A DNA stretch of 64,000 nucleotides from Mytilus edulis (lineage: Eukaryota), in the NCBI RefSeq assembly GCF_963676685.1, contig NC_092355.1, positions 11,656,001-11,720,000 on the forward strand, given 5' to 3'. A program made the translations under genes and the position numbers. Of this stretch, positions 22,807 through 54,159 are shown one piece after another (position 1 is the first letter of the stretch; each line of letters opens with the position of its first letter). A model generated the notes under the pieces. It was not told the origin of the DNA. It ran no database searches and was given only the letters and a program-made list of their open reading frames with translations.

Positions 22807-25800
22807 CTAAGAGTTGCGAAATCCGGTTGAAAGAAAATTATACAGATAATTATTTGCAATCCTATATTCTTGCATTATTTTAACAGCCAATTCAAGATAA
22901 TAAGCCACATTGTCAATTGTTAAACCTAATGCATGGTGATGTTGAACAATCGCGTTTTTATTACGCAGGTCAATCTTAATGTTACGTCGTATTTTATTGC
23001 AGCTAACTATGAGATGAAGATTGAATGCTTTATGGGAATTCTTAAAAAAACTACAGGAAGTTTCGCAAACTGAATTCATAGCTGCATATTCATATTCACA
23101 TTTGTGTTCGTCTCCAATTCTAAAAAAGCATAAACATCGTAGAAAGTGCATGTAGCTTCTTGGGCACATATAATAAATATGAAAAACATATTTGTTTGTA
23201 AACTCGGCATTAATATAAAGTACTCTTGATAAGTCACTCACGACTAAATACGAATTTTCCGGAACCATAAATTCGTATGATGATAAATAATGTAAGTCGT
23301 TGCAGTCGCGTGTACAGATTAAAACTTTTTCAAATAAATCCATTCGCATTATCCTCTTTCCGTCATGACACATACATAAATCGATATTCTTCAGACAAGC
23401 ATCGGTTATTTGTGAACATTCGTTATGTTTTCCTTGCATGTGTAACCAAGAAGCTAGTGATAGTTTACCAGTTATGATGTTATCTGTAAAGTCCATCATC
23501 AACAGTTGCCATTGAAACTTACGTAATGCATCAACTATTTTGTTATCAAGTTTTTGATTGTTCGTGTCAATAAAATGGGACAACACTGGTATGGTTTTTT
23601 GTCTAATCATCGGCACTTTGCACACATTTGATAAAAAAGATTTAAAATTTGAACGAATGTGTCTGGACATAAACAAAGAAATCCTCTGTCTACAATGTAT
23701 AACTATTTCCAATAGTAAATCATACATGTCGAAGTGTTCCCTTTTGTGAGACGTATATTTTATCATCTCTATGTTTGATTCTTGACTAGCAATATAGTAC
23801 GGAAATTTTTTTAGTGTTTCAGTTTGTAGAACCCATTGCCACCCGTTGCAATTAATTTCACATAAAACATTTAACAATATTCCTCTACTAGAAGTATTAA
23901 ATCTTTTATGGAACATGTTATTACCTGTTACAAAATAGTTCGGACAATTTTCTTCAATCACAAACTGAATTAATCGTCGTATGCATACATTAAGGCAGAG
24001 GAGTATATTATGAGGTATCCAATATGATGAACTAGTTCCCTCTATTACCCAGAACATGACCGTTTTCAAAATATAAGAACAAATCAATTGTGCAATATTC
24101 TGTGTGTCTATAATTTCTTTCAAAACAAGTTTAAGGACCCCATACACTAACATCTGACTATGATTGAAAGTTGATATTAACTCCTGTTCTGCTAAACAAA
24201 ACGATAATCTCCAGTCATGGTTGTTATCGTGATCTCTACTACTTCCAACAGGAACTATAAAACAGCCTTTTTGTATTATGGAAGTAATCATTTCCCCAGA
24301 CGGCCAGCCAAATTTCCGTTTTCGATGAATCCATTCATCTGCAATTATCGGCCATGTTTCACTTTGTACAGCTATAACTTTATCGAAATCATCAGAAAGT
24401 GTGGTAGTCATAAGGGCTGGCCCGTGTACTACATGATCTTGAAAACTTGATTTTTTTAAAGACGCCTCAATTGATTTTTTATAGACATGACTCGATTCAA
24501 ATTCTCCTGAATTATCATTTATTTCAAGTATTACATATCCGGGATATACGTTACTCATCAATGAGTCATATGTGTAATATGCGTCAAGAAATGATCCGTT
24601 ATGTGAATTGTCTCCTTTTTCGCGTGCTGAATGCGTTTGTATGTTTAGCATATCAGTATCACTTCCAGGCATGTTTAATCCTTCAGATTTACTTCCAATG
24701 ATATACGCTGATTTGGGTATATTAACATATGTATTTAGTAAAAGTCGACGAAATTTTACGGTTCTCTCAGTTCCAATATGAATACACAGAAAATGAAAGA
24801 AAATTTCTGACTGCTTTTTCAGTATAGCTATACGCTCTTCTCTTTTACCTTCAAAAAAAATATCAATCATAGAACACAATTTTGATAACAGCATGTTATT
24901 CATGTCCTTGTTCATGTTGAATTATTTGATTAAAATGCGCTATATTCCAATAAAAGGACAGTTTTTGGCAATTCGAACGTAAACACTATGCTATTCATGA
25001 ATAGAAAATACCAGTTTGATAATTACAAACGACATACATGGTTAAGGAAACATGCAAATTGCCGACGAAAGGTCTTAACATTTGAGAAGATGTATCTTAG
25101 AACAATTTAAGGGGTACACAACTCTGTACGCCAAAGGAAAACCTGTTTTTTCCCCTAATTTTCCTGTCATTCATAAAGAAGGCCTAGCTAAACATCGTAT
25201 ACAAATATGTTTAAAAGGTTTGATAACTCGAGTAAGGCATCTTTTACATGCTAATATCGCTCAAAATTGAAAATTTCAGAAGAATCGGTATATTTGTTGA
25301 AATTTTTTAAAAACAATCCTTAATTGGTAAAAGCATTGTGTACAGTAATAACTGAGGCGAATGTTAGTTCACCAAAAACCCTTTTCATGTAGGCTTTTTT
25401 ATTATTCTAGACTTCTTTGTCGTTTTTTGATATATCATTAAATAGCAGCATTAAATAGCAGTGTGCCCCTTTACAATTATTTTTGAAAATACATACTTTA
25501 GCAGGCAAGGACATGTTGTCTTTTGAAAGAGACCCGATATATTTGGCATGTTAATTCAAAGTTTTAACAGTCAATATTTAAATAAAAATACATATTAGCT
25601 AAACTCGACAATTCAATAATATTGACATACATTATGACATACCAGCAAATGCAATGCACACGGAATACCCAAAGGACATGTGGTTACACAAAAAAAATCA
25701 AACATTGTCTAGTTTCTGTTGAGTCGAAATGCTTGAAATCTAACTTACCCTTAACTACTTCATCGAATGTTTTTAAATTTCACATACGGATTATGCCTGT

Positions 25801-28800
25801 AACACGACACGAAAAAGAAATAAAAAGGGAGTAAACGTTTCGTTTTTGAGTCACGAGCTGTTATTATTAATAATACACATAATACATACATGTAAGACAA
25901 TTCTTAAAAATCGGCAAACACTATACATGATCAAGATTTTCAATTTTGTTGGTCTAAAGATTTAAAAACAAAAAGATATACGAAACAAAAATGAAATACG
26001 AATGTATTTGTGAAAGAACCATGGCTCCTGAAAATCTTAACTGCCAGTAAGATATGAAAAAGGTGTGATCGTGGAAGATCCATATGTATGATCAAGTTCT
26101 TCAACAAAGTAATATTTCTGTAGTGGTTTTCAAAATCAAATACAACTGGTTTTTAGATTAAAACAAAACATTCTTACACATTTTATCATTATGTAAGAGT
26201 CTTATGTTATCATTTCCCCTTTTATTCTACCAGATATCAAACTGCAGTTCCAAGTGTCACATTTTTGTAGCCTCCTTATACTCTATTTGGTCATAATTTT
26301 GAATTGAGACTTTATCTCAAAGTTGTATTCACTAGTCCGGAAAGATACATAAACGCACACAAAAAACTTCGGTATCCCTTCGAAATAATAATTTAACAAA
26401 GTTAACATGGCATGTTATTTTTTCATAATATATGTGTAGTTTTAGTTTCAACTATGGTTTTAAATTCAGACTTTACTCTCGTGAAAAAATTTCGGAATAG
26501 CAGACACTTGTTTATTATATACACATATCTGGATACAGGTTGACAACTAAGAGTTAATTGATAAAGTGTAATGTTTTTTAGACTCAATCCGATTGTTGTT
26601 TTTATCTTGTTGTTGTCTCTGTTTCTCGATTTGTAAATAATGCACTTAGACTTGATGCTCCCCTTGGTGTCTTCTGCTCACTATAGTATAATTTAAAGTA
26701 TAAATAATAATAATTCATGAAAAAATTGTATGTTGTGGGGACCAGAATCTTGCATAAGATGCTACTCTATTATTTTTGTTTGCAATATAAAATTCATTAG
26801 ATTGGTATTGTTTTATTCTGGATTGAAGTCATTTAAAACTAGGAGCTATATGTCTTAACGTTCTTCTAAAGATGTACTTTTTAGCTATAATAATTAACAA
26901 ATTTATAAACAAACTCTAAAATTTCCGTCTCACTAATGCTGAATTGCTCATCTAATAATTGAATTTTCTGTAGAATTGACAACCAAAAACTGTATGTACC
27001 ATTACAATCATAAAATGAATGTTCTATTGTTTCCTCTTCCTCACTACAGAAGGTCTATAGACTTGTTTCCTTTTGCTTAATTCTATATAAAAATGTATAA
27101 GTAGGTATAATTCTATGTAATATATTATATTGAAAATTCCTCAAATATGTATCCCTACAACATCTTTTCAAAAGAGAAAAATACTTAGATCATTCTGAGG
27201 TTTCAGAATTTGTTACATCCTCCCATTTTAAAAATTTCTCATATGGGAGTATGCATATAAGATCTCTGTATACAAAATTTAACTTCTCATTTTCCAAGAT
27301 CCTTTTAGAGAATGCATCAAAAGGAACAAAATTTTCTAAGTTAAAATCACAATAATATTTGATGTATTTTTTATTTACTTTGGAATGTTAGATACAAACT
27401 TTGGTATCTCAAAACATTTTCCAAATTAAGTGTTTGTCTTACTTGTTGGAATGTTAATAGTGATTTATTTTGACTATCTACAATGTTTCTTATAAACTGT
27501 ATACCATATAACTTCTGTTTCATATAAACAGGGTATTCAGATATTGGTATAAAGTTATTTAAAATATCCAAATTTCTGGAACACATAACTTTGTATAAGG
27601 CTTTGCCATGTGTAGACATTCAAATATGTCTATCCAAAATGGGGGATTTTTTTAAGCAATTAGAAATTTCTTTAATCTTATCCTTTTGTAATGGAAAGAC
27701 TCTGTCACCACCTAACTTTTTTAGTTCTGTTAGTAATAAATTCTGCCAAGTACCCTCTGAATTTGAAAAAAATCACTGTACCCAAGGTAATTTAAGATAT
27801 GTACAGAAAGACTGCAAATGCACCATATTTAATCCTACCTGTGAAAAATCTGCAATAAGAGTACTATGCTTTACTCTATCAGTCTTACCATTCCAAATGA
27901 AATTAAAAAAACATAGCACTCAGCCCATTTAATAGTGAGTGAGGTAAATATGGCAGGGCAGTTAACAAATGAATCAAATGAAATCAATATCAAGAATACT
28001 TTTTAAATCAAGCGAAAAATCAATTCCTAAAAGTCTAAAATTTGTGATTGACCACAAAAGATTGTAACATGTAAAAAGAATCAAAACAATTTAGGCTTTC
28101 TTGCAGTCATGTCTAATGTCTAATGTTAGAAAAGTCTTATCTGTATACTGACTTAAAAGTGTTTGTTTTTCATTAATGAGGATTCCATGCATTTTGGGGG
28201 TTGTCTTAAGTTTCAACGATAATAACTCTACACCAATAACAAACAAATCAGGGGAGATCAAGTCACCATTGGTCATGCATGTTGTTCCTGTGTAAGGGCA
28301 ACATCGTGAGAAAAAAAGCTTTCACTTGAACAATCAATTTTTCTCTTTGAATACATTTTTTTATAAAAAATATGCTGTTCTAAGAGAATCGTGGATTGAT
28401 AAGATATATGATTACCCTAATCACTAATCATTTCAACCATTGTCTTCTTTATAAGATTTCTCTTTTCTAATTTTAAAAGGTATTTGGAACATTTTCCACT
28501 ATTTTCATGCCAGTTAGCCCGGGACCGTAATGGTAAACCCTCTAGCTTCTGCTCTCTCATGGATTCTAACTCCACTTTTTTATCATTTAAATTGGTCTGT
28601 ACAGCTTCAGTAAGGGTTGTATTCATAATAATATCTAAATTTTGTATATCTTTTTCAAGTTTCAGAGTAGATTTTTTTTTCTTCTTTTCATTTAAATATA
28701 CTGTGTGTAATGGACAAGGATCGGATTTTCATCTTCAGAACTTCAAGAAACAATTGATCTTTACAATAAAATTGTACATGAAATTGGTCATATCTACTGT

Positions 28801-31800
28801 TTTAAAGATAGAACTCAGAAACAGTATCCTTAATACACATCTTTACCTTTTCAACATATACAGTATCTCTCAACAACTGTGAATTATTGTAATATTATTA
28901 TCAATACTCATTAAATAATATGTTCAATCAGACAAAAGAAAAACAAAGCAGTGCAATACTTATAATAAAAATGTTTACCCATACTAACAACACATTTATA
29001 CATTGCAAATACACACGAAAGATGGCACTTGAAACAATATACAATATACATCAGATACTTATTTACAGATTGGCTTCATATGATAAATAACATATTTTTT
29101 ATTCTGATAATTTGGTGTTAAGTGCTTTATTTTCTTTATAAATCTTAAAATCTCTTTTTATCTTCTGAGAACTTTATTCGAATAAAAATAATTTTTTAAC
29201 TCTTTTATACAGCTGTTATAATATATAAATTATTTCTATAATTTTACACTACTAGGTGTATTTCATTAAAAACAAACGTTGAAAAGCCAATTCCGATTTG
29301 ATTTTGATTAATTTGGTACGAATAGAAGAACACTTGTCCTTGGTTTATTTATTTGTTTAGTTATAATTCTTACCGTTTTCATTCTTAATTCTTAAGTAGA
29401 CACTTACAAACCAGCTAACGGTGTTTATATTTCACAATATGTCCATGGCTGTTGGGACGTTTTGATTTTAATGAACGTAATCTATGAATCACTAATAAAT
29501 TATCAAGCGAGGGATTTCGTTACCATAAATTACTTTTTTTATATTAAGTTCATCCACACATATAAATATCTGGTTTTGAAGTTTAGTTGTTCCTGTAGAA
29601 CACTTATATAAACGGGATAGAACACCCTCATTTTTACGGACATGTTAATTTGCGTGCCTTGAAATTTTGAAACGATCCTGGTAAACTTATCGATCCTTTA
29701 AATAAACTTAATTTAAACGGTTATCGATTCAACACTGTAATTAGATCATTGAATATATTTTTTATTCGTACTAATATTGATTTTTTTCGGTAAATTTAAA
29801 GCAAACAATTAAAATAGTATTGTTATATACATTTTGTACATGATCTATCATCTACAATCGTTCGATGCCTGTATCTTGGTAATTTACAAGATCATGTTTT
29901 TTCTCTGACTGTTAATCAAGTCTTTACATTTTATTGGATAATGAATGTGTACTGATTGATAATTCAGTCTTAGATGCATGACTTTTTTTATTAGTTGTTA
30001 ATGGCTTTGAATTAGCTTTTAGTAACTGTAAGTTCTCTCAGTTCTGTACTTAGTGTCTTTTTGTTGTTGGGATATGCGATTCACTCTGAGTTTTTAAACT
30101 GATGTGTTTCTATTTGTACAAAAATGAGTTAATCGATATAGGAAGATGTGGTATCAGTGCCAATGAGACAACTCTTCATCCAAATAACAATTTATAAAAG
30201 TAAATCATAATAGGTCAATGTACGGACTTCAACACGGAGCCTTGGCTCACACCGAACAAGCTATAAAGGGCCCTAAAATTACTAGACTAGTGTCAAACCA
30301 TTCAAACTGAAAAATCAACGGTCTAATCTATATAAATAAACGTGAATCGAGCAACACGTATAAATTACATAAACAAACGACAACTACTGTACATCAGATT
30401 TCAGACTTAGGACAGGTGCGAACATTTGCCTTTATAAACGTTTTTTTATAATTCGTTCATATGTTGTACTGTAACACCACTGTCCGAGGTTAAGGTGAGT
30501 GTAAGGATCTTTGTTGACATGTTTAATCCAACCACATTATGTATGTATCTGCCTATCCCAAGTCAGGAGCCTACAATTCAGTGGTTGTCGTTTATTGATG
30601 TGCTAAATACTGTTTATTTTTCGTTTATTTGTTTGAACATTATTAGGCCGATAGTTTTCTCGTTTGAACTGTTTGACATTTGTCATGTCGAAGCCAATAA
30701 TAGCTGTCTACGCGGTATGGATTTGCTCATTGTTGAATGGTGTACGGTAACCTAAAATTGGTCATTTCTGTGTCATTTTGTTTCTTGTGGAGGTTTGTAC
30801 CATTGACAATCATATCTTCTTTTTTATATTATAGTAGTATTTTCTCAAAATAGAAAAAAATCCAAAAAATCTGTACACATTTGATACAAATATACGCTGC
30901 ACAAAATTGATAAACTCAATTTATATTTGCTTATTATAATAATAAATGTATTAAACAAAAACTGTTTGCTTAGTACCAGTCGGATCGAAGGATAATGCAT
31001 AAAAAGATGTTATGAACGTATGATATGTGTATGGGAACACGAGAATACACGTTTCAAAACTTGAATTCTCCATCGATCAAAAACTCAATCAATGCATGTG
31101 TAGTTCAAAAGACATTGGCGAATAAAAAATGAGGTATCGTAAAAATGAGAGCTTGTTCTCATTTCTTTTGTACTCTGGTTGTTATACTGAGTAGTCTTTG
31201 TTTGTTATCTCTAATGTCTGATTTGACTAGGGGCTAAAAGTGACAAATTCCCTTTGATCCTATATTTAAATGATATTATGAAATTGCATTATATAGAGAA
31301 TAATACATGGAAAAATCCGTATCATGTGTCGTATCATCCCGAGACATCAATATCAGCCCAAGGGCCTTTAGGATGATACGGCACTGGGTAACAGCTTTCC
31401 GTTCTACCTTTGTTTTGTTTAAAAAGCATTAAAAGAACTGCTCAATTACTTATCCGAAGCACTTGGGTTACCTTATAATTTGCAAGCTGTTGTTTTAAAA
31501 ATATTTTGTTTATTGTATTTTTTGTGTGTTTGGTATGTTTTATAGATGCATTTAGTGTACTAATAAATATGAAAACTTGACGTGCGTGACGTCACATGCC
31601 AAACAATGACGTATTTCAACAAATTGCGTCCCGCCCGAAAGACCGTTTATTTAGGACATATTTTGAGGGAAAATATTTCAAAGCTTACATATTAAGTAAA
31701 AACTGTAAAAAAAAAAGTAGGGGTGTGATAAAGGGTGCAATAAAGGGTAGGGTGTGATAAAGGGTATGATAAAGGGTATGCTAAAGGGTGTGATAAAGGG

Positions 31801-32556
31801 TGCGCATCAAAGTTGCACGATATTGATTAAACAGCAGGCTATTTTTCAAATATTCAAATCTACTGCATTTACTACTTAACATATGATAAATAAAAGTATT
31901 TCATATTTCGTCTATATTGTCTGTATACCTTTTACTGTTGTGTTGTGTGAATCATTTGATGTATTCTTCTACCGTTTTGTTGTTCATCATGAACTAATAT
32001 TATGACCTTTTCCCTGTTTCCTAATTTACAATTATATGATTGCAATCTTGAATGATATATGTATTTCTTATATGCAGAAACAAATGTAAATCATATAATT
32101 CTATGGCAATCACTTAGCACCTTGAGTAAAGTTTCCTACTGTATCATTACAAAATAAAAAACACATACCTTTAGCTATTTGCAAACAATCTAAGAATTCA
32201 TCTGTGACTTCCATATCTGTAAATGGTGAATCGAACATTTTTTTGGTCCTGCATTTTTTTCCATCATGTCCAAGATCTTTTCTAATAAATCGGGATTTAC
32301 CTTCGAATGCCTTTATCTTGTTGTCTTCGTGAATGCAAATTACTTGCTCATGAGATAATTCAGAAGTTTTCTTCCAACTTTTACTCAAAAAATCATTAAC
32401 AAAGTTGAATTTTCCAATTTTGTTTTTCATGTAATCACGATACACATTAGCTTCAATGTCACACTTTTGATTATGACGCCAAACAGAATGCAGAAAGTTG
32501 CTTGAATTTCTAACTGTTTTATAGGAGAATTCGTTTAAATGCTTTTGTGTCATCAT
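22807..32556 (-). CDS. cGAS-like receptor / Mab-21 nucleotidyltransferase A. Coding exons 32556-32169 and 24848-22807, ~810 aa.
   Basis: NTase signature GSKSEGLNMPGSDTDML, third Asp region DFDKV, plus HGPA, WRLSF, CSYILKTVMFW and CPNYFVTGNNMF motifs, and a long helical C-terminal extension. Donor AAG|GTATGT after 32169 joins acceptor TTTTTTGAAG| before 24848 in frame (IAK-G-KREER). Confidence 0.88.
25111..25469. mobile_element. Short MITE, Kolobok-like, in the cGLR-A intron
   Basis: TTAA-GGGGTACACAACT ... AGCAGTGTGCCCC-TTTA: ~13-bp imperfect TIRs with a TTAA-like target site. Confidence 0.5.
26700..28880 (-). mobile_element. Decayed L1/Tx1-clade LINE ORF2 remnant inside the cGLR-A intron
   Basis: Minus-strand fragments RSRANWHE..KCSKYLLKLEKRN, GDLISPDLFVIGVELLS...SQYTD (degenerate YADD) and FQYNILHRIIPT...FCSEEEETIEHSFYDC (zf-RVT). 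Many stops, frameshifts and internal deletions. Confidence 0.8.
31296..31802. repeat. Hairpin-containing repeat ending in a 12-bp minisatellite (GGGTGTGATAAA)n
   Basis: GTGTCGTATCATCC/GGATGATACGGCAC hairpin at 31326-31384. About 6-7 copies of the 12-mer at 31721-31802. Confidence 0.65.
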
Positions 32557-37953: not shown

Positions 37954-38484
37954 AACGAGTCCCTCATTTTCCTGTGACTACCTGTTTCAAACAACGCCGG
38001 ATTTAGTACTGGCTTTACAGTTCGAAATTATTTTTAAAATAACAGTTTAAATTACAGGTTTTCATTGATTCGGGATGATGTATAAGTACGTTGCCACGTT
38101 CAATTATTTTACCTCATTATACAATACTTATTTTTTCAATCAGTATTATACTGATATTCGTTTGGGAGGCTTAAATATGTAGTTTCTGTTGTAATTGCCC
38201 TACCGTTGTCTAATTTATACCATCCTTGATCGGTTAGGACATTTTTGATTTTTTTGTTTGAGGACTGCCCTCAATGCAGTTATAACATCTCAACTGTCAC
38301 AACCTTTGGAAATCTAGAGTTGTGCCATTTCACATCGTAAATAACTATTTTTATTTTTGGCATATTTCTGTAGTCTTTGCGGTGTGTTTGGAAATTTTAA
38401 AATTGTTCCAGCGTTCGCTTAAATTGTATAAATCAAGATTTTGATAGAGTCTCAATTTGAATTGACATGATTCATTTGTCATTG

Positions 38485-39381: not shown

Positions 39382-39779
39382 CACGTTACAAGAATTAATA
39401 TTAACCTCTGAAGATTCACTCGCCGCGATATAGCCTATTAGTGCTAATGCGGCGTAAAGCAAACAACAAACTATCAATCTGAGGGTTTAAGCAGTATATA
39501 TTGGACGACTTATGAAGTTATACATTTGTTTACAGAACACCGTAAGACTTTTCTTAATACGTCATTTCCTTTATTTGGTCAACTGTACGTAATTGTTGAC
39601 CACTCCCGTGATACTACAGTTTATATCACGTGTCTATACATATATACGAAAGAACCTTTAGTACAAACAAAAATCCTCAATATTTCGAAACGCGGAAATG
39701 TATTAGTACACACTATATTAATATTAGGGATAAAATACCTTAAACACATTTTACAATTGCCGTTTGCCCACAAGACTAG

Positions 39780-41692: not shown

Positions 41693-41772
41693 CGATAAGG
41701 GCGTTGACCATTCGCATGTACACACGTAGTTTTTGTTAGTTAAACCTGTATTGCCGTAGACTTACGTTGACA

Positions 41773-42522
41773 ATGTCCGATATGGAGGAGGAAATCTTGG
41801 ATTTACCGAGTGAACAAGGTACGTCTACTAGAAATCCGCATGAAATGTCTAATGCAGACTTATTTTCACTTCTCAAGACGTATATGGATACTAGACTGTC
41901 GGGTATTGAAACATCTTTCACAGATACTACGCATACTTTGGAGAAAAAGGTTAAAAAGGCTGAAAATTCGTTCAAATTCAAGGGTCATCAGGTCCAGTAC
42001 GAGCTGAACGTAGATTTACAGGATTTGGTACAGAGGGCGTTGGATTATCTAGGGAGAAACAAGTCGGATAAAGCGGTAACTATTCTGAATGAGGCTCTTA
42101 ACACGCTAAAGAAAAGAAACAAGCTCATAAGAATTGCTGACAAGTCGGAGGGAGGGTGGAAGACCGTACAAGAATATTTGTCCGATGATTTAGCCAGCGA
42201 CTCCGAGGATGAAAAGAAGATAAGGGCAGCTGATACCCGGGCGGTGAAAAAGTTAAAGTCCGTTAAATCTGCAGACAAGAAGCAGAACGTTCGAAAAAGA
42301 CCAGCCGAAGCATCCGGTTCTACATCGCAGACAGCGCATAACGCAATTCCAGTTTCTGTCAGCATGCCGCCCTTTCGCGGGAGCAGACCTGGTTACGGAA
42401 ACCAGGTCAAAAGGTCCAGGGAAGGAGATATGTGTTTCAGGTGTGGATTATTTGGACATTGGGCATCCGATTGCAAAAAAGACACCAAGACTGGATTTGG
42501 AGCTCCCAGAGGAAATTCATAA
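41773..42522 (+). CDS. Gag-like protein with CCHC zinc knuckle
   Basis: RNKLIRIADKSEGGWKTVQEYLSDDLASDSEDEKKI (DIRS-family gag motif) and CFRCGLFGHWASDC. First ATG at 41773. Confidence 0.9.
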   Translation: MSDMEEEILDLPSEQGTSTRNPHEMSNADLFSLLKTYMDTRLSGIETSFTDTTHTLEKKVKKAENSFKFKGHQVQYELNVDLQDLVQRALDYLGRNKSDKAVTILNEALNTLKKRNKLIRIADKSEGGWKTVQEYLSDDLASDSEDEKKIRAADTRAVKKLKSVKSADKKQNVRKRPAEASGSTSQTAHNAIPVSVSMPPFRGSRPGYGNQVKRSREGDMCFRCGLFGHWASDCKKDTKTGFGAPRGNS

Positions 42523-44497
42523 GGATTTCAGCGCTCATACGGACACTTTACAGGTACAAGATGTTTATGAAACTTATTTTGAATATGAAAAGGGTCGTTC
42601 AGATATTTTTGTTAAAGACAGGCTTAAAAATTCTGTAAACTTTTGGAAAAGTATTAACGCTTCTAGTTTTATTGTTGATATTATTGAAAATGGTTACAAA
42701 ATACCTTTGTTAAAAGAGCCCGAAAATATGGTTTCTAAAAATAATAAATCTGCGTTAGAGCATTCAGATTTTGTTTCAAGTGCAATTAAAGAGCTTGTGT
42801 CGGGCGGTTTAGTAAAACGTGTATCAATTATGCCACACGTTGTGAACCCTTTAACTGTTTCAGTTAACGGTAAAGGTAAACACAGATTGATTTTAGATTT
42901 AAGACATGTAAATAAACAAGTGATTGTAAACAAAGTCAAATTCGAAGATTGGAAAACTTTAGCACAATATGTTACTTTGAATTGTTATGGATATGTCTTT
43001 GATTTGAAGGCGGGATATCACCACTTAAACATTTTTGAACAACATCAAAAGTATTTAGGGTTTTCGTGGGAAGGAGAATTTTATGTTTTTACTGTGTTGC
43101 CATTTGGTTTAAGTTCAAGCGGGTATATATTTACTAAAACTGTGAGACAATTGGTAAAGCACTGGCGTAAATCTAGCATAAAGGTAGCTGTTTATTTAGA
43201 CGACGGTTTTGGGGTCGAAGTTAGTTATGAACTATGTGAAAAGCACGCTCGAAGAATCAAAGCAGACTTGATTGCTTCTGGTTTTGTGCCAAACAAAGAC
43301 AAGTGTGTATGGTTACCTGCACAGCACGTTGAGTGGTTAGGTTTTTCATGGAATTTAATTTCTTGCAAATTGCAAATTCCTCAAAGAAAAATAGATGATA
43401 TATTGAATTTGGTAGCTTTTATACTAAATTCTAGTTACAGGGTAAAGGTACGACAGTTGGCCAAAATATGTGGTAAGTTAATTGCTTTAACACCAGCAGT
43501 AGGTAATGTTACCCAGATAATGACGAGAAACATTTTTTCAGTCATTAATATAAGAGACTATTGGGATCAATATGTAAACATCGGCAAGTATCCAGGTTGT
43601 ATCAATGAGCTTATTTTCTGGAGAGATAATTTGCCTTTATTAAAGGCGGTTGATCTGGTAAAGAACATTTCAAATTTTCATGTTTTCACAGATGCTAGCG
43701 ATACGGGTGCTGCTGGTTTCATACAAAATTCAACAAACATTTTGCACAAAATGTGGTTAGAAACTGAGCGAGGTAGGAGTTCTACTTGGCGAGAAGTAAA
43801 AGCAATTCAGTTATGTGTCAGTGCCTTTTCAAAACTCTTACAAAATAGTATCGTGACTTTTCACACAGATAACAAGAATGCTGTTAGCATCATAAATAAA
43901 GGTAGCAAAGTACAAGAATTACAACAGTTGTCCTTAGAAATTTATAGGTGTTGTTTACATGAAAACATTACATTACACATTATATGGTTACCCAGAAAAG
44001 AGAACGAGCAGGCTGATTTTTTAAGTCGGATTATAGATATTGATGACTGGGGTATTTCTCCAGAGTACTTTCAGTTTTTAGACGACCTCTGGGGTCCTCA
44101 TACCTTTGATAGGTTTGCTAATATGGACAATAACAAAGTAGATAAATTTAGTTCGTTGTACTGGAACCCTGGTTCCTCGGCAGTAGACGCTTTCTCGTGC
44201 CACTGGGCACAAGAAAACAATCTATTAGTACCACCTGTGTCTTTAGTTTGTAAGTGCATAAACCACTTGGTTAAATGCAAAGCAGAAGGAACACTGATAG
44301 TTCCGAGTTGGCCGTCGTCTCCTTACTGGCCATTAATTTTTGATGAAAACACAGAACACAGATCTTACGTGTTAGATGTGCTCGAATTTAACGAGGTAGA
44401 CAGAATTTTAGTTTCTGGAAACAATTTAAATTCTATTTTCGCGAACGGAAAATTCAAAGGTAGAATTTTAGCTGTTCGATTAAAAGCTTCTGATTGA
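42443..44497 (+). CDS. Reverse transcriptase + RNase H + degenerate DNA N6-adenine methyltransferase-like domain
   Basis: RT motifs RLILDLRHVN, DLKAGYHH, LPFGLSS and YLDD. RNase H motifs TDAS, STWRE, TDN and NEQADFLSR. MT-like DRFA...YWNPGSSAVDAF...NLLVPP. Overlaps gag in another frame; true start unknown. Confidence 0.93.
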   Translation: MDYLDIGHPIAKKTPRLDLELPEEIHKDFSAHTDTLQVQDVYETYFEYEKGRSDIFVKDRLKNSVNFWKSINASSFIVDIIENGYKIPLLKEPENMVSKNNKSALEHSDFVSSAIKELVSGGLVKRVSIMPHVVNPLTVSVNGKGKHRLILDLRHVNKQVIVNKVKFEDWKTLAQYVTLNCYGYVFDLKAGYHHLNIFEQHQKYLGFSWEGEFYVFTVLPFGLSSSGYIFTKTVRQLVKHWRKSSIKVAVYLDDGFGVEVSYELCEKHARRIKADLIASGFVPNKDKCVWLPAQHVEWLGFSWNLISCKLQIPQRKIDDILNLVAFILNSSYRVKVRQLAKICGKLIALTPAVGNVTQIMTRNIFSVINIRDYWDQYVNIGKYPGCINELIFWRDNLPLLKAVDLVKNISNFHVFTDASDTGAAGFIQNSTNILHKMWLETERGRSSTWREVKAIQLCVSAFSKLLQNSIVTFHTDNKNAVSIINKGSKVQELQQLSLEIYRCCLHENITLHIIWLPRKENEQADFLSRIIDIDDWGISPEYFQFLDDLWGPHTFDRFANMDNNKVDKFSSLYWNPGSSAVDAFSCHWAQENNLLVPPVSLVCKCINHLVKCKAEGTLIVPSWPSSPYWPLIFDENTEHRSYVLDVLEFNEVDRILVSGNNLNSIFANGKFKGRILAVRLKASD

Positions 44498-44746
44498 TAT
44501 TTGTGAAAATTTTTATTATTTTTTGCAGATTTTACTGACTGGAGGTTCTCTATTCAGAGATGTTGGCTTACAGAAGCTGATTAATGTGTATGTTGTGTCA
44601 CTTGACGATATTTTTGGGGCCACATGGTCTGTAGATACCACTGGGTATAGTTATGGTCACTGGACCTGTTTTTTCTGTTTGTTGTAAGCTGAGCAGTTAC
44701 GCATATTTCAAGGTAAATATTTATTTAATTTATAATTATTTTACAG

Positions 44747-45766
44747 AAAATATTTTCAACGGGATTTTGGAAAAATGACACACAAGTAAAGCACACAGAA
44801 CTTAAGATTTTGTTCAGAAAGATGAAGAATTCAGTTATTGACTCAAAAGCCAGAAATACAACTGTTAAATATGCATACAGTTTTAAGCGTTTTGTAGTGT
44901 GGTCTGAAAAGTATACAGAAATCAAGTCTGTCCTTCCTGCAGACGAAATCTATGTCAGTTTATATCTTCAATATTTAATGCAAAGTGCTAAACATTACAG
45001 TACTATAGAAGCTGCATGTTACGCTATAAAGTGGGCTCACAGTTTAGCTGGGTTTGAAGACCCATGTGCCTCGGATATAGTTAAATGTATTGTTGAGGCA
45101 TCTAAAAGAAAGCTTAATAGGCCTATTCAGAAAAAAGAACCGATGAATGCAAACATCATGCTTAGTCTTTTTAAGAAATTTGGCGGTGCTAATAGTTCGT
45201 TAAAAAATCTTAGATTATTAGCTATGTGTTTTCTGGCTTATTCCGGATTTTTAAGGTACAGTGAACTATGCCAGATTAGAGCTAAGAACATTACATTCGG
45301 AAACGATCATATTGACATATATATTGAGAGTAGCAAAACAGATTGTTATAGAAAAGGAAAAAACGTTTTGATAGCTAAACTTGATCAAGCTCACTGTCCT
45401 GTTAAAATTTTAAGTGATTATTTAGATAAAGCTAAAATAGACAGGTCCTCAGATGATTTTGTGTTCAGAGCTTTATCGTATTGTAAAAGTACAAACAACT
45501 GTAAGCTGAGAAAAAAGAATATACAACTATCTTATACTAGGACTAGAGAGATTTTAAAAGGGGCTCTGTCGGAGTTAGGTTTAAACGCAAGAATTTTTGG
45601 TACACATAGTTTTAGGGCAGGCGGTTGCTCAGCCGCTAGTAACTCTGGTGTATCGGACAGATTATTAAAGATTCACGGAAGGTGGAAATCTGATATTGCG
45701 AAAGACAGTTACATAAGCGACAATTTGAAAAAACGCTTATTAGTTTCAAAATCTTTAGGTTTATAA
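44747..45766 (+). CDS. Tyrosine recombinase (phage integrase family)
   Basis: GFLRYSEL, SKTD, HSFRAGG, HGRWKS and DSY catalytic motifs. The frame is open from the acceptor-like TTTTACAG at 44746. Confidence 0.93.
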   Translation, partial: KIFSTGFWKNDTQVKHTELKILFRKMKNSVIDSKARNTTVKYAYSFKRFVVWSEKYTEIKSVLPADEIYVSLYLQYLMQSAKHYSTIEAACYAIKWAHSLAGFEDPCASDIVKCIVEASKRKLNRPIQKKEPMNANIMLSLFKKFGGANSSLKNLRLLAMCFLAYSGFLRYSELCQIRAKNITFGNDHIDIYIESSKTDCYRKGKNVLIAKLDQAHCPVKILSDYLDKAKIDRSSDDFVFRALSYCKSTNNCKLRKKNIQLSYTRTREILKGALSELGLNARIFGTHSFRAGGCSAASNSGVSDRLLKIHGRWKSDIAKDSYISDNLKKRLLVSKSLGL

Positions 45767-48578: not shown

Positions 48579-51500
48579 TCAGTCTTTAAAGAAGTCTTCG
48601 ATTAAATTTACTGGTGCTTGATTTAGAAATTTATTTAAGTTCCTTAGGAAATCAACACATTCTTTTGTTGTAAAATCAAATTTCTTCCGGTGTTCCCTTA
48701 AAACTCGTTCCCATTCCAATCTATTGCTTACGTCAAAATCAATGTTATGTCGTATTCTATTGCACGTAAGTCTAAGGTCAAAATTGCTTGCTTGGTGTCG
48801 GTTCTCAAACTGTCCACAATAAGTTTTACACACTGACTTCATTTCGTTGTATTCATGTTCACATCTATGTGTGTCTCCAAGTCTAAAATAGCACAAACAC
48901 CGTAAAAAGTAAATATAACTTCTTGAACAATATTTTGCAATTGTCAGTCCATATTGAAAACACATATTCTTTTTCTTTCCCTTAAATACTTCTAGTAATT
49001 CTCGGGGAACTATTAATGATGTAATCGGGAACTCAAAATTAGACGACGTTAAATATAACATTTCAGTGAAATCGCGTGTAGTCCTTAAGAAGTTGTAAAA
49101 TAAACCAGTCTTCATTATTCTTTTACCTTCATGAAACATACACAAATCTAAGTTCTTCAAACCTGCATTGGTTACTTGTAGACTTTCATTATATCTCCCG
49201 CGAGTGTATAACCATGAGGATAATAGTATTTTACCAGATACAATACTGTCTAAAGATTCCATTGTTAACAAATGCATTTCCAATTTACGTAATGTGTACA
49301 GTGATTTTTGTCCAAGATTTGAATTATCCGTGTCTATGAAATGGCAAACCAGTGAAATAGTTTTATGTCTAATGACTGGCACTTTGCAAATTGTTGATAA
49401 GAAAGATTTGTTCATAGGAATAACTTTAGACATAATATAATACGTTCTTTCCCTGCAAAGCTGAATTATATCAAAAGTTAATTTGAAAATGTCTAATTGT
49501 TCCTTTTTGTAGACAGTATGGTTTAAAATGTCAATATCAAGCTTTTGTCTTGTCATAAAGTAAGAAAATCGTTCAAGAGTTTTTGTTTGCAGCACCCATT
49601 GCCATCCATGGCAAGCAATATCACATAAAATTTGTAACAAAACTTTTTTTTCTGCAGTATTGAATCTTTCACGGAACAAGTTATTACCTTTTACAAAATA
49701 ACTTGGACAATTCATGGCATTCACAAACTGTATTAATCGTCTGAGACAAAGATGAAAACAAAGGAGTATATTCTGAGGAATCCAATAAGATGAACTAGTG
49801 TCTTCTATTACCCAGAACATCACCGTTTTCATAACGTAGGAACAAAGTAGTTCTGCAACATTTGGTTTGTTCATAATCTCTCTCAAAATTAGTTTGAGAA
49901 CCCCATATACTAATATCTGGGTATGATTGAACGTTTCTATTAGCTGTTTTTCCGCTGTACAAAACGATAATCTCCAATCTTTATCCACGGCATGATTTCT
50001 GCTGCTTCCTACAGGAACAATATGACATCCTTTTTGAACAATAGAATAAATCATTTCCTGAGAAGGCCATCCAAATTTCCGATTACGATGTATCCATTCC
50101 ATTGCAATTTTTGGCCATGATTCACTTTTTAGTGAAAAGATCTGATCATAGTCTACATCCCGTGTTGATCGCATAAATGCAGGTCCATGCTGTTTTAACT
50201 TAGTACAATTCTTTATACCTAATATATCATTAAGTACATTCAAACAAGTGTGAAGTTCATTACTTGGTACAAAGTTTCTTAACATCACATATCCAGGGTG
50301 TATAATATCCATCAATGAATCATATTCAACAACAAACATTGCATCATTGTTTTGTTCTCCCGTTTCATGCACCGGTATATTTGCTACAAAAAGGTAATCA
50401 ATGTCACTTCTAGACATGTCTAAACCTTCAGATGTACTACCGATAATTTCCATTTGGGCTGAATAAGGATGATTTATTTTATTATGAAATTTATTAATCA
50501 ATAGTCGACGAAGTTTCACTATTTTTGCAGTCCCAATATGAAGACTTAGAAAACGGGAAAATAATTCGGATTGTGTCCTCAGTATAGCTATCCGTTCCTC
50601 TCTTTTACCTTCAAAATGAAAAAAAAATGTCGAAGTGAAATGTGAACAGTATATATCAATATATGTTACAGTAAATGTATAATTGTGTAAGAAGGGTATT
50701 AATTTGTCGCGAATTGTGCACAATCACTAGAAAAAAACAAGACATCATTTTAACAGGATGCTAAAATGAAGTCTCCTAAGCAAAATTTGTATAAGTGTGA
50801 ACCGATGAAGACTCTCTATTAATCATCAATTTTTAAAGCATTTGCAACATTTTTGGAGAACTGCTGCGGTGTTCAAAATTGAAAATCGCTGCGTAATAAT
50901 AGTAATAATAATAATAACACTTGCAATAGGAACTTAGCAAAACCACTACATTGCCAAACTTTGTTTCTTGAGACTTAGATTTCAGGGATCATAACTGATT
51001 ACAGGAACAAACAGACAAAAAATTAAAAAATAAAAATTTGACACAATCCACATTATATGCAAATCATAGATTTTGTGTAATATTACCTACACTACAAATA
51101 AGAAGATGTGATATGATTGCCAATGAAACAACAGTCAACAAGAGACCAAAATGACACAGCCATTAACAATTATAGGTCACCGTACGACCTTCAACAATGA
51201 GCAAAATTCATACCGCAAAGTCAGCTATAAAAGGCCCCGAGAAGACAATGTAAAACAATTCAAACGAGAAAACTAATGGCCTTGTTTATATAGAAAAAAA
51301 TGAACGAAAAACAAATATGTGACACATAAACAAACGACAACCACTGAATTACAGGCTCCTGATTTGGGACAGACATATACTTAAATAATGTGGCGGGGTT
51401 AAACATGTTAGCGGGATCCCAACCCTCCCCCTAACCTGGCACAGTGGTATAACAGTACAACCTAAGAACGAATTATACAAATCAGTTGAAAAAGGCATTA

Positions 51501-53186
51501 CTCATCAGATGGGCAAAAATACAAGTGTACGTGGCCGGGTACTTATACATCCCGACAAAAAAGACACAATGAACAGATCTGAGAGTACTCGCAGTTATCT
51601 GACAGCTAGTTCAAAGTCACTAACACGAATCAATCTAACCTATTTCTTATACATGTTATACGTACAGAACAAGTCGGTTTCCTAAAATATCTCACAATTT
51701 TCACGAAGCCAGTGCATAAGGGATTGTATTTGAATATTGTAAAGAAGGGATAATTGTTATTTATATACTTTTCGCATTATTAAACTAGAGGCTCTAACGA
51801 GCCTGTGTCGCTCATCTTAATATATGTGCATATTAAACAAAGGACACAGATCGATTCATGACAAATGTGTGTTTTAGTGATGGTCATGTGTTTGTAGATC
51901 TTACTTTACTTAACATTCTTGCTGCTTACAATTATCTCTATCTGTAATGAAATTGGTCCAGTAGTTACAGTGGAAAATAGTGTAAACATTTACATTTTAT
52001 GAAAATTGTAAAAAAAAAATGACTATTAAGGCCACAACTCCTTAGGGGTCAATTGACCATTTTGATCATGTTGACTTATTTTTAGGTCTTACTTTGCTGT
52101 ACATTATTGCTTTTTACATTTTATTTATATCTATAATAATATTCAAGATAATAACCGAAGACTGCAAAGTTTTCTTAAACGATCACAAAAATTTATGAAA
52201 AATGGTTAAGAATTAGCTATAAAGGGAAATAGGGGTCAATTGATAATTTTGGTCGTGTTGACTTATTTTTAGATCTTACTTTGCTGAACATTTTTGCTTT
52301 TACAGTTTATCTCTATTTATAATAATATTCAAGATAATAACAATAAACTGCAAAATTTCCTTACAATTACCAAAATCAGGGGCAGCAACCTAACAACGGG
52401 TTGTCCGATTCATCTGAGAATTTCAGGGCAGATAGATGTTGACCTGATAAACAATTTCACCCGATGTCAGATTTGCTCTAAATGCTTTGGTTTCAGAGAA
52501 TCTATATTTTACCCCTGTCTTCTAAGATTAGCCATAGCGGCCGTCTTGGTTGGTTGGCCAGGTCACCGGACACATTTTTTTAACTAGATACCCTAATGTT
52601 GATTGTGGCCAAGTTTGATTTAGTTTGGCCCAGTAGTTTCAGAGAAGAAGATTTTTGAAAAAGTTAACGACGACGGACGAAGACGAGGAGATCGACGACG
52701 ACAACGATGGACGAGGACGCCTGACGCAAAGTGACGAGAAAAGCTCACTTGGCCTATCGGCCTTTCCGAAATTCTGTTTTTCGGATTCTATTGAAGACAT
52801 TAGTGTTACTGAGGAAAACAAATGACATTAAAAAAGCATTTATATAGCTTAAGAAAAATCAATGAAAGGACAAACGTTAGCGTTAAACATGTTAAATACA
52901 ATTAAATGTCTAATAATTTCATAATTTTTGGGATATTTACATGACATCATACTCAAACTCAACAAATATATTGTCAATTTAAGCTCCAGCATTTTTTTTA
53001 AATCATCTGCAGTATATATTTTGATAGAATCCGTGTGGTTCTTCATACATTGATAAGTATTATAACCCAAAACATGAAATTTATGTTTATGATTAACTTT
53101 TTATAGAAAAGCAACAAACCTTGAGGAATATTCAAACTATCTAGGAATTTGTCTGTTACTACCACTTCGGAAGAATGTTTTGACAT
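48579..53186 (-). CDS. cGAS-like receptor / Mab-21 nucleotidyltransferase B. Main exon 50608-48579; upstream exon 53456-53120 partly decayed, possible start ATG at 53186.
   Basis: Motifs GSTSEGLDMSRSDIDYL, HGPA..DYDQI, WRLSF, CSYVMKTVMFW and CPSYFVKGNNLF, colinear with cGLR-A. Donor CAAG|GTTTGT after 53120 is in frame with acceptor CATTTTGAAG| before 50608. Confidence 0.85.
51098..51625 (+). repeat. Abundant interspersed repeat family (near full-length copy)
   Basis: AAGAAGATGTG.TATGATTGCCAATGA...CCTTCAACAATGAGCAAA...GGCTCCTGA.TTGGGACAG...GGCGGGGTTAAACATG. Related pieces at ~6430-7110, 29900-30820 and 62635-63240. Confidence 0.75.
51782..52770 (+). mobile_element. Helentron/pearl-like non-autonomous element with internal tandem core repeats and a GACG-rich tail
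   Basis: Starts AACTAGAGGCTCT..GAGCCT (subterminal palindrome). ~185-bp internal repeats (TAGGGGTCAATTGA at ~52043 and ~52230). (GAC)n/GGAC microsatellite at 52667-52725, then AAAAGCTCAC. Confidence 0.7.
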
Positions 53187-54159
53187 ATTGCTGTCGCTTA
53201 AAGACAGTGAATCAACACAGTGTCTGTCTTTTCTAAACACTCTTCATTTAAATTTGAGTTACACAAGCCTTTCTTTAGTTGTTTTACTGATCGCAACCCA
53301 CTTGTTCGTGAAGTAGTTCTGAGGTTTTCTTCAATCATCTATTCGAGGAGTCATTATCGTAGTTCTACTTTCCCCTTTTGTAATAATCTTCATAAACTAT
53401 CTTATAAGGGAATTCGTAGAAAAGGTTTTTGGGCCATTGTTCTTCATATGCTTAAACTGAAAGAGATAAAGACATAATAAAATATTTGATACAAAAGTTT
53501 TTCGTTCACTTTCCAATTGAGGAGTTTTATCTGACAGTAATTTATGCAAAGTTCAGCTTAGTAAATAAATCAGTTATTTCAGATAATTAGCAAACTTAAA
53601 AAGAATAGTATATAGGAAGATAAACCTAAAAAAATGAATGGAATATTATGAAATTTCTCCCTTTGTATCATTGCCGTATTATCAAATATTTTTAAGTCAA
53701 AAGTCAAAGATCTGAACCTATTTCAAGATACTAAGTCTGGAAAACATGATTTATTTATTTGTTATAATAGTCTTTGCGTTTGCTTTCAGTAACTATAAGT
53801 AGTCTTAGATCATTACGTTGTGACCTTTGTCATTTTGTCAGTTGTGTAACTAGGTGCTTTATGTAGAACTGACGACTCAAGCCTTTTTGTTTGATAGTTG
53901 TTTATCATTTTGTACCTTTGTACATCTGTCTAAAATGAGTAAAGGATTGAGTGACCTCGAAACATGTAGCTCCGCACGATATTCATTTGGGTCTGAATCC
54001 ATTAGTCAGCTGCGAATGTGTTTAGTCGCTGAATTCATAGTGTTTTTGGTTTATTATTATGTATGAATTGTTTACATTTGAAATTTCAGGTTGAAGCCGC
54101 AAGGTGACATATAGCTGAGTTATTCAATCTTTGGTGTTGTAAAATCCAAAAAATACATA

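What the first reader, a model, noticed from the sequence alone, without database searches (positions are those of the whole stretch)
22807..53456. Tandem cGLR pair with a hidden, shared N-terminal exon
Seen: both large Mab-21 ORFs become homologous exactly at an acceptor (..TTTTGAAG|GT AAA AGA GAx). Each has an upstream minus-strand exon ending in a homologous peptide (DMEVTDEFLDCLQIAKG vs EVVVTDKFLDSLNIPQG) followed by a phase-1 donor. The ORF-track start codons are therefore probably intronic. cGLR-A gains a ~130-aa basic N-terminal region of no family I recognise, and both proteins carry a ~300-aa Cys/His-rich helical tail after the Mab-21 domain. Known: cGLRs make cyclic dinucleotides, are expanded in bivalves, and cGAS uses a basic N-terminus for nucleic-acid binding and regulation. 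Inference: a three-part cGLR subfamily (new N-terminal region + NTase + helical tail) with intact catalytic acidic residues.
Basis: partly seen in the sequence, partly recalled or inferred. Interest (0 to 1): 0.8.

Follow-up and report, generated by a model that had tools for sequence, protein, structure and literature searches.

The report
Mussel cGLR gene pair, upstream exon
Two neighbouring mussel genes of the cGAS-like immune-sensor family each begin in a small upstream exon that a plain open-reading-frame view misses; one copy keeps an extra mussel-only front end of unknown role and the other has lost it, which is a useful correction to the gene models but not a new kind of system.

Summary
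Two head-to-tail minus-strand genes (A 22807-33553, B 48579-53456) each have one large exon: a Mab-21/cGLR nucleotidyltransferase core plus a ~330-aa helical tail. A-B homology starts exactly at an AG|GT acceptor. Each has an upstream exon ending in a related peptide and a phase-1 GT donor.

Gene B's model is not new. RefSeq XP_071141321.1 from this same Mytilus edulis assembly matches window 53186..53121 (22/22) and 50606..48582 (675/675).

No protein above 54% identity to gene A was found. Its model rests on four things:
- the same intron position in 5 of 5 paralogues;
- open 129-147-codon N-terminal exons in four of them;
- annotated 791-855-aa relatives;
- contigs of one probable RNA run showing a GT..AG 5'UTR joint and a break at the donor.

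Three raw RNA-seq runs show essentially no reads on A's exon. The 32169->24848 joint itself was not seen.

The catalytic GS/DxD/D residues are kept in 59-60 of 61 relatives. The tail is TPR-like and found across bivalves, and its Cys/His are not conserved. The N-terminal region is an orphan with 10 hits among 1.84 billion representatives. Function is inferred, not shown.

The parts
33302..33553 (-). Gene A 5' non-coding exon (at least this span)
   Evidence: X1 contig joint 33302->32572 skips 729 nt. The skipped ends are CT..AC on + strand, i.e. GT..AG on the gene's strand. Contig piece lies on 33302-33553 (tables 5 and 8).
32169..32572 (-). Gene A N-terminal coding exon. Acceptor is before 32572, ATG at 32556, 129 codons, then a phase-1 G at 32169 followed by GT. 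A uORF ATG sits at 32563 in another frame.
   Evidence: Sequence. X1 joint ends at 32572, and an X1 contig lies on 32166-32498 with 121 letters that leave the stretch at the donor. Open homologous exons exist in three paralogues.
24849..32168 (-). Gene A intron (7320 nt), containing a very abundant repeat at about 30000-30400
   Evidence: GT at 32168-32167 and AG at 24850-24849. No homology to B's intron except an inverted repeat copy. Depth up to 60,000 in X1.
22807..24848 (-). Gene A large exon. cGLR core is residues 1-~350 (23797-24846), helical tail is residues ~351-679 (22810-23796), stop codon at 22807-22809.
   Evidence: Pfam Mab-21 2.5e-7 and Mab-21_C 2.2e-13. AF2 pLDDT 89.9, pTM 0.89. 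Cv-cGLR1 Z 24.9.
24382..24696 (-). Gene A catalytic motif: G51 S52 (24691-24696), D63/D65 (24652-24660), D155 (24382-24384)
   Evidence: IIGS-X10-DTDM-X87-FDK. These columns are kept in 59, 60, 59, 60 and 60 of 61 aligned relatives. They align to the catalytic acids of cGAS and Sp-cGLR1 in the profile search.
53120..53456 (-). Gene B upstream exon. Acceptor AG is at 53458-53457. 53187-53456 is the decayed remnant of the N-terminal coding region. ATG at 53186, 22 codons, then a phase-1 G at 53120.
   Evidence: Sequence. Stops in all three frames. 22/22 identity to residues 1-22 of RefSeq XP_071141321.1. Remnant is 63% identical to the intact relative P0043, with in-frame stops.
50609..53119 (-). 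Gene B intron (2511 nt)
   Evidence: GT donor and AG acceptor. Implied by the RefSeq protein.
48579..50608 (-). Gene B large exon (cGLR core + helical tail, 675 codons after the split Gly, plus stop)
   Evidence: 675/675 identity to residues 24-698 of XP_071141321.1. Pfam Mab-21 4.6e-8 and Mab-21_C 4e-14. IIGS-X10-DIDY...YDQ.
35782..45766 (+). Retroelement ORFs filling the A-B spacer; not part of the genes
   Evidence: RVT_1 ORF at 35782-37953. CCHC gag, RT-RNase H and tyrosine-recombinase ORFs at 41767-45766.

Best explanation
These are two head-to-tail paralogous genes of the bivalve cGAS-like receptor (cGLR) family in Mytilus edulis.

Gene structure (shown):
- Each protein is encoded mainly by one large exon. 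That exon holds a Mab-21 nucleotidyltransferase core with an intact active site and a ~330-aa TPR-like helical tail. The model places both in one compact body.
- Each gene is spliced from an upstream exon at a conserved phase-1 glycine codon just before the first core helix.
- This intron and exon define a small clade: A, B and three other paralogues in this genome, plus their Mytilus orthologues. The rest of the very large family has no such exon.

The two genes differ at the front:
- In gene A the upstream exon encodes 129 residues. It has a conserved block containing a predicted beta-hairpin and long helix, then a variable disordered linker, then a conserved TDEFLDxLxI(P/A)xG motif.
- In gene B the same exon has decayed into untranslated sequence. 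Translation starts 22 codons before the junction, close to the position of an internal Met (A residue 107) that several relatives share.

Function (inferred, not shown):
- Both proteins are ligand-activated synthases of a cyclic nucleotide second messenger.
- The tail acts as the ligand- or partner-binding or regulatory module.
- The N-terminal region acts as an accessory regulatory or targeting module that B does without.
For: Gene structure:
- Homology starts at the acceptor.
- Donors are canonical GT and acceptors AG, at the same Gly codon in 5 of 5 paralogues.
- Each N-terminal exon lies 1.6-2.7 kb upstream of its large exon on the same strand.
- B's model equals RefSeq XP_071141321.1 of the same assembly.
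- The paralogue at C12:34.2 Mb equals the annotated 840-aa P0009 (707/707 over its large exon).
- Annotated Mytilus proteins P0010, P0016 and P0018 carry the full N-terminal region.

Gene A transcript:
- In run X1 a contig joins 33302 to 32572 across a GT..AG interval on the gene's strand.
- Another X1 contig lies on 32166-32498 and then leaves the genome for 121 letters. The intron and the large exon both begin GTA, which explains the 3-nt offset from 32169.

Coding status of the N-terminal exon:
- It is open for 129-147 codons in A and three paralogues.
- It appears in 10 representative clusters of the exhaustive search.

B's loss: stops in all frames.

Enzyme core:
- Pfam Mab-21_C hits 61 of 61 relatives and Mab-21 hits 55 of 61.
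- The PDB profile search gives 8gjy 3.8e-38 and cGAS about 1e-25.
- Foldseek finds cGAS and Cv-cGLR1 at E about 1e-9.
- VIA gives Z 24.9 (Cv-cGLR1), 23.9 (Sp-cGLR1) and 23.9 (mouse cGAS).
- G51, S52, D63, D65 and D155 are kept in 59-60 of 61 sequences.

Tail:
- AF2 gives pLDDT 89.9 and pTM 0.89 for the whole 679 aa.
- One repeat matches consensus TPR at E 1.6e-4.
- BBS4 gives Z 10.2 and PilF Z 9.6 over model residues 379-642.
- A profile of 43 Mytilus tails finds tails in two scallops and a unionid.
Against: - The joint 32169->24848 was not observed directly. It spans 7.3 kb, which exceeds the 6-kb limit for laying reads.
- I did not see the 121 loose letters of the X1 contig, so their identity is unknown.
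- X1 is labelled RNA only by the tool's guess.
- Three raw RNA-seq runs, sampled at 6-18%, gave depth 0-0.09 on A's exon.
- No protein above 54% identity to A exists in the 5.8-billion collection, so annotators apparently did not call gene A.
- The strict cGLR motif of Li et al. is not met. A and B have I where [QT] is expected before GS, and K or Q where the last hydrophobic residue is expected.
- No product, ligand or STING link was tested.
- The TPR assignment of the tail is weak. Z of about 10 is below the tool's noise bar for helical repeats, and Pfam TPR families hit only 1-2 of 61 members.
- The N-terminal model is confident only for residues ~50-88 (mean pLDDT 63).
Confidence: 0.72

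Rival explanations
1. Gene A's 129-codon upstream ORF is mostly 5'UTR. Translation starts at the internal Met (residue 107, KKMFD...) as in gene B, so the real proteins of both genes have only a ~22-aa leader and no N-terminal domain.
For: B starts near that position. The RefSeq model P0017 of a related gene starts at the homologous Met. A uORF ATG at 32563 overlaps A's first ATG. The N-terminal fold prediction is weak.
Against: In a 31% GC genome the ORF stays open for 129-147 codons in four paralogues. It also appears as ORFs in 10 representative clusters with conserved blocks. B shows what decay looks like: stops in all frames. Annotated proteins P0009, P0010, P0016 and P0018 include the region.
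Confidence: 0.1
2. Gene A is silent or decaying and is not a working gene. This would explain why it is unannotated and shows no RNA-seq reads.
For: Depth was 0-0.09 on the exon in three raw RNA runs. No matching protein exists in the collection. Neighbouring copies decay: B's exon, and a third pseudo-exon 54 kb away with 4 stops.
Against: Both exons are fully open, 129 and 679 codons. Catalytic residues are intact. Splice sites are canonical. Spliced contigs are present in run X1 at depth 7-8. Immune genes are often silent without challenge (established knowledge, not tested here).
Confidence: 0.12
3. The proteins have the cGLR fold but are not cyclic-nucleotide signalling enzymes. They could be another kind of nucleotidyltransferase or a non-enzymatic scaffold, like MiD49/51 or Mab21L1.
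For: The fold search scores MAB21L1 (Z 21.1) and MiD49 (Z 19.8) nearly as high as cGLRs. The strict h[QT]GS...h[DE]h motif is not met. The first look at this genome gave 831 candidates for the family, an unusual number for a signalling enzyme. No biochemical data exist.
Against: GS and all three acidic residues are kept in 59-60 of 61 diverse members, which argues for catalysis. The closest sequence relatives among solved structures are active cGLRs: 8gjy at 3.8e-38, against MAB21L1 at 7.6e-12.
Confidence: 0.2

Closest known systems
Invertebrate cGAS-like receptors with solved structures: Cv-cGLR1 (8gjw, Crassostrea virginica) and Sp-cGLR1 (8gjy, Stylophora pistillata); Li et al. 2023 preprint PMC9980059 (passages read)
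   Same: [quoted passage not shown] They also share GS/DxD/D and the WP..A.EW..R.R..GWP block. Both belong to large bivalve expansions (passages).
   Different: The solved proteins are about 350-aa cores. A and B add a ~330-aa helical tail, and A adds a 129-aa N-terminal region. The residue before GS is I, not Q/T. Product and ligand are unknown.
cGLRs fused to TPR or ankyrin repeats (Li et al. 2023, Fig. 1C legend and text passages; Table S2 not seen because supplements are closed)
   Same: The general architecture is the same: a cGLR core plus a helical-repeat module.
   Different: Pfam TPR families recognise only 1-2 of 61 tails at E<=0.01. A domain census based on conserved-domain records would therefore probably count these proteins as having no extra domain. 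Whether this family is in their table could not be checked.
Vertebrate cGAS
   Same: It shares the fold and catalytic acids. It also has an extra N-terminal region ahead of the core.
   Different: Identity is only 16-18%. A's residues 196-212 contain no Cys where cGAS has its zinc thumb (motif recalled, not from a call). A's N-terminus is only mildly basic (pI 9.2) and is partly predicted as folded. cGAS has no tail.
RefSeq models XP_071141321.1 (M. edulis), XP_076083514.1 (M. galloprovincialis) and the 840-aa M. edulis protein P0009
   Same: XP_071141321.1 is gene B itself. P0009 is a paralogue with the full three-part form and the same junction.
   Different: All are named 'uncharacterized protein'. 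No equivalent model for gene A was found.

Membership tests
cGLR (criteria quoted from Li et al. 2023 preprint) | GS, then 8-20 residues, then two acidic residues, then 50-90 residues, then a third acidic residue | tested here: met
   A has GS-X10-D63xD65-X87-D155 and B has the same pattern. These columns are kept in 59-60 of 61 relatives.
cGLR (criteria quoted from Li et al. 2023 preprint) | Strict flanks of the motif: h[QT]GS ... [DE]h[DE]h ... h[DE]h | tested here: not met
   A reads IIGS, DTDM, FDK. B reads IIGS, DIDY, YDQ. The family column before GS is S in 33, I in 9 and T in 4 of 61. The solved cGLR 8gjy itself has K there, so the flank is not universal.
cGLR | Homology across both the NTase core and the C-terminal helix bundle | tested here: met
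   Pfam Mab-21 and Mab-21_C hit both A and B. The profile alignment to 8gjy covers profile positions 50-354.
cGLR | Predicted structure homologous to known cGLR/CD-NTase enzymes | tested here: met
   VIA gives Z 24.9 (rmsd 3.4, 295 aligned) to Cv-cGLR1, with bacterial CD-NTases at Z 14-16. Foldseek gives probability 1.00 to cGAS.
cGLR | Synthesis of a nucleotide second messenger on ligand binding | not testable with these tools
   This needs a recombinant protein assay.
TPR repeat proteins (for the tail) | Recognisable TPR repeats by profile and a TPR superhelix by structure | tested here: inconclusive
   One repeat matches consensus TPR at E 1.6e-4. BBS4 Z 10.2 and PilF Z 9.6 are below the tool's bar of about 13 for helical repeats. 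Pfam TPR families hit 1-2 of 61 members; A has none at E<=1 and B has TPR_2 at 0.2.
cGAS proper | Zinc-thumb insertion and a strongly basic disordered N-terminus (features recalled, not from a call) | tested here: not met
   A residues 196-212 have no Cys (translation). The N-terminal exon has pI 9.16 (K+R 24, D+E 18). Residues ~50-88 are predicted ordered.

The most novel reading that the evidence does not exclude
The helical tail that packs on the NTase core, shared across bivalves, and the Mytilus-only N-terminal module make these cGLRs sensors of something other than free nucleic acid. The ligand could be a protein or another pathogen or stress signal. The long and short N-terminal forms would act as a regulatory switch, with full exon versus start at the internal Met. 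Gene B would then be a natural 'short-only' variant, and the A/B pair a ready-made comparison for what the N-terminal module does.
Probability: 0.15. Interest if true: 0.65.

Novelty: new variant of a known kind. Interest (0 to 1): 0.36.

Why it matters
Bivalve cGLRs are a very large and almost unstudied set of putative immune sensors. Most have no known ligand.

This locus gives three things:
1. A corrected model for gene A, for which no annotated protein was found. It has at least three exons and about 809 codons.
2. A natural pair that differs by the presence or loss of a 129-aa orphan N-terminal region on an otherwise intact enzyme.
3. Evidence that the ~330-aa tail, invisible to Pfam in most members, is a conserved domain across bivalves, confidently modelled against the catalytic core.

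These are leads for biochemistry, not a new principle. Gene B's model and the three-part architecture are already in automated annotation.

Tried and rejected
- RNA check of the A junction. Only 6 kb could be laid and the intron is 7.3 kb. I laid 28000-33999, covering exon 1, its upstream region and part of the intron. It gave the 5'UTR joint and a contig break at the donor. It did not show the acceptor side or the identity of the 121 loose letters. B's junction was not tested with reads; it rests on RefSeq.
- N-terminal region. All of the following were blank or noise:
  - Pfam: none.
  - Word search with P0009 residues 1-136: 3 proteins, all Mytilus.
  - Atlas by features: no usable hit; by structure: TM <= 0.32.
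  - AF2 model: weak.
  - Foldseek: best E 3.8.
  - VIA wide: best Z 3.8.
- Tail.
  - The region search returned nothing, although searches show clear tail homologues. I treat as uninformative.
The notes say such parts are barely tested.
- Zinc site in the tail: rejected. No Cys or His is conserved beyond 45 of 61 sequences.
- Further copies.
  - No other Mab-21 fragment lies in the window.
  - A third N-terminal pseudo-exon lies 54 kb away, with no large exon in the 40 kb of flanks sampled. C12:11770001-11772629 and other gaps were not sampled.
- Literature. Five searches found no paper on this N-terminal region or tail. Only passages of PMC9980059 were read. Its Tables S1 and S2 were not seen and could list this family.
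- Not attempted: Ka/Ks between A and B (51% identity, synonymous sites saturated).
Full report
WHAT IS THERE

The window is C12:11656001-11720000 of a 1.37-Gb genome. I identify the genome as the RefSeq Mytilus edulis assembly on two grounds. The annotated M. edulis protein P0009 sits on a contig of 82,303,794 bases, which is the length of C12. P0009 is also 707/707 identical to an exon of this genome.

Two minus-strand ORFs of 702 and 714 aa lie at 22807..24915 (gene A) and 48579..50723 (gene B). They are 51% identical over 638 residues. The alignment begins exactly at EGKREER, and the 21 and 37 residues before it do not align. At DNA level the homology stops 8 nt upstream of the exon start. 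Both sequences read ...ttttgaag|GTAAAAGAGA there.

- A has its ATG at 32556, then 129 codons, and ends ...GCTAAAG|gtatgt after 32169.
- B has its ATG at 53186, then 22 codons, and ends ...CCTCAAG|gtttgt after 53120.

There are no N runs in the window.

IS THE SPLICING REAL?

For gene B, yes, and it is already annotated. RefSeq XP_071141321.1 (M. edulis, same chromosome length) is 698 aa. Residues 1-22 equal window 53186..53121 (22/22). Residues 24-698 equal window 50606..48582 (675/675). Residue 23 is the split Gly. The M. galloprovincialis orthologue XP_076083514.1 is 673/675 identical over the large exon and has the same leader.

For gene A the evidence is indirect but consistent:

1. A genome search with A's exon finds open homologous exons at C12:34.20 Mb, C6:63.32 Mb and C12:47.82 Mb. 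Each lies 1.6-2.7 kb upstream, on the same strand, of one of the closest large-exon paralogues. All five genes have a GT donor after a phase-1 G and an AG acceptor at the same Gly codon.
2. Annotated Mytilus proteins of 791-855 aa (P0009, P0010, P0016, P0018) carry the full N-terminal region joined in this way.
3. Reads were laid on 28000-33999.
   - Run X1 (contigs, 'RNA?' by the tool's guess) has a contig joining 33302 to 32572. The skipped interval has ends CT..AC on the + strand, i.e. GT..AG on the gene's strand.
   - A second X1 contig of 454 nt lies on 32166-32498. Its other 121 letters leave the stretch at the donor.
   - The 3-nt difference from 32169 is expected, because the intron and the large exon both start GTA.
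   - The coding exon therefore begins at an acceptor 16 nt before the ATG, and gene A has a 5' non-coding exon.

Evidence against gene A being active:
- Three raw RNA-seq runs of the same species label, of which 6-18% was read, gave depth 0-0.09 on the exon.
- I did not see what the 121 letters are.
- No protein above 54% identity to A's large exon is in the 5.8-billion collection.
- Neither ORF-only version of A is in the collection.

WHICH COPY CHANGED?

B's region 53187-53456 aligns with A's exon. It has stops in all three frames and lacks about 75 bp. It is 63% identical, with in-frame stops, to P0043, an intact exon of this type found in Logan contigs. The acceptor at 53457-53458 is retained. 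B therefore lost the coding capacity of the region. This agrees with the scan's own note s1-838117. B's ATG lies one codon off the position of an internal Met (A residue 107) that several relatives share and at which the RefSeq model P0017 starts.

Outside this clade, family members in this genome and annotated proteins of other bivalves mostly start 1-10 residues before the core. The extra exon is therefore a derived feature of a small clade.

THE PROTEIN CORE

- Pfam finds Mab-21 and Mab-21_C in both genes. Mab-21_C hits 61 of 61 aligned relatives and Mab-21 hits 55 of 61.
- A profile of 61 relatives hits Sp-cGLR1 (8gjy) at 3.8e-38, cGAS at about 1e-25 and MB21D2 at 9e-25.
- The AF2 model of A's large exon has pLDDT 89.9 and pTM 0.89.
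- Foldseek finds cGAS, Cv-cGLR1 and MB21D2 at E about 1e-9.
- VIA-align gives Z 24.9 (Cv-cGLR1), 23.9 (Sp-cGLR1), 23.9 (mouse cGAS), 23.3 (MB21D2), 21.1 (MAB21L1), 19.8 (MiD49) and 14-16 for bacterial CD-NTases.
- The active site reads IIGS-X10-DTDM-X87-FDK in A and IIGS-X10-DIDY...YDQ in B. G51, S52, D63, D65 and D155 are kept in 59, 60, 59, 60 and 60 of 61 sequences.
- The strict motif quoted by Li et al. (h[QT]GS, h[DE]h; passages) is not met at the flanking positions.

THE TAIL

- Residues ~357-676 are helical and confidently modelled together with the core.
- One repeat matches consensus TPR proteins at E 1.6e-4.
- BBS4 (Z 10.2) and PilF (Z 9.6) align to model residues 379-642. That is below the tool's noise bar for helical repeats.
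- Pfam TPR families hit only 1-2 of 61 members.
- The Cys/His content is raised, but no position is conserved beyond 45 of 61. I see no metal site.
- A profile of 43 Mytilus tails finds the tail in scallops (P0026, P0027), a unionid (P0025) and three unnamed proteins. It does not find it in the crinoid hit or in 11 other non-Mytilus rows.
- The family is very large here. The first look gave 831 candidates, of which the 65 that were scored all matched. This is a lower bound on matches, not a copy number.

THE N-TERMINAL REGION

- It is 129 aa with pI 9.16.
- Its layout is a conserved block (about residues 1-85), a variable linker, and then the TDEFLDxLxI(P/A)xG motif.
- It has no Pfam family.
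- An exhaustive HMMER search of 1.84 billion representatives gave 10 proteins at E<=0.001. Three are long proteins and seven are short ORF calls, most of which run through the donor. The named holders are all Mytilus.
- AF2 with 11 sequences gave pLDDT 63. Only residues ~50-88 are confident: a hairpin at 52-63 and a helix from 69. Residues 96-114 fall below 50.
- There is no fold match: Foldseek best E 3.8, VIA best Z 3.8, Atlas TM <= 0.32.

HOW IT MOST LIKELY WORKS

Shown:
- the gene structure;
- the cGLR fold;
- the intact catalytic residues;
- the conserved tail;
- the orphan N-terminal exon, kept in A and lost in B.

Inferred from what is known of cGLRs (Li et al. 2023, passages):
- ligand-triggered synthesis of a cyclic nucleotide signal;
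- the tail as a binding or regulatory module;
- the N-terminal region as an accessory module.

Nothing here identifies the ligand, the product or the receptor.

COMPARISON AND NOVELTY

The family, its expansion in bivalves and the existence of cGLRs with appended repeat modules are in print. Gene B's model and the three-part paralogue are in RefSeq as 'uncharacterized protein'.

I found the following neither in annotation nor in five literature searches:
- a model for gene A;
- any description of the N-terminal region;
- any description of this tail as a conserved bivalve domain.

The supplementary tables of Li et al. were closed and may list the family.

Verdict: a real and correctly read gene structure, and a modest variant within a known family. 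The polarity of one inference is reversed.

The joined spliced models were not built, searched or folded.

Noticed in passing
window 35782-37953 (+) and 41767-45766 (+): The A-B spacer holds two retroelements. One is a 723-aa RVT_1 ORF. The other has CCHC gag, RT-RNase H and tyrosine-recombinase (Phage_integrase) ORFs, a DIRS/Ngaro-like make-up. The scan's note s1-838119 reads the second as Ngaro-type.
   Followed up: partly
window 30000-30400, and 30427-30816 vs 51110-51497: A repeat in gene A's intron has enormous depth in RNA data: up to about 60,000 summed contig depth in X1, and 6-25 reads deep in each direction in the raw runs. An inverted copy at 78% identity sits in gene B's intron. 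It is probably an abundant transcribed mobile element.
   Followed up: no
G000:C12:11774130-11774345 (-), 54 kb beyond the window end (locus L004): A third copy of the N-terminal exon has 4 in-frame stops. No large Mab-21 exon was found in the 40 kb of flanks sampled, though the sampling had gaps.
   Followed up: partly
window 32561-32563 and 32236-32238: An upstream ATG at 32563, in another frame, opens a 14-codon uORF overlapping gene A's start at 32556. An internal Met (residue 107) is shared by several relatives and coincides with B's start and with the start of RefSeq model P0017. Long and short isoforms are possible.
   Followed up: no
whole genome G000: The tail-bearing Mab-21 family is huge. 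The first look gave 831 candidates, and the 65 scored all matched at E<=1e-46, many as open frames of 600-740 aa in clusters on C12, C10, C5, C13 and C14.
   Followed up: partly
protein P0026 (Ylistrum balloti, 991 aa): One scallop family member carries a Piezo_TM1-24 match at 1.7e-62 ahead of the cGLR core. This is either a gene-model fusion artefact or a real fusion.
   Followed up: no
G000:C12:34208641-34213890 (loci L003, L008, L022): Next to the intact paralogue at 34.20 Mb lies a broken copy. Its N-terminal exon fragments have a stop, and its large exon has 4 stops.
   Followed up: no
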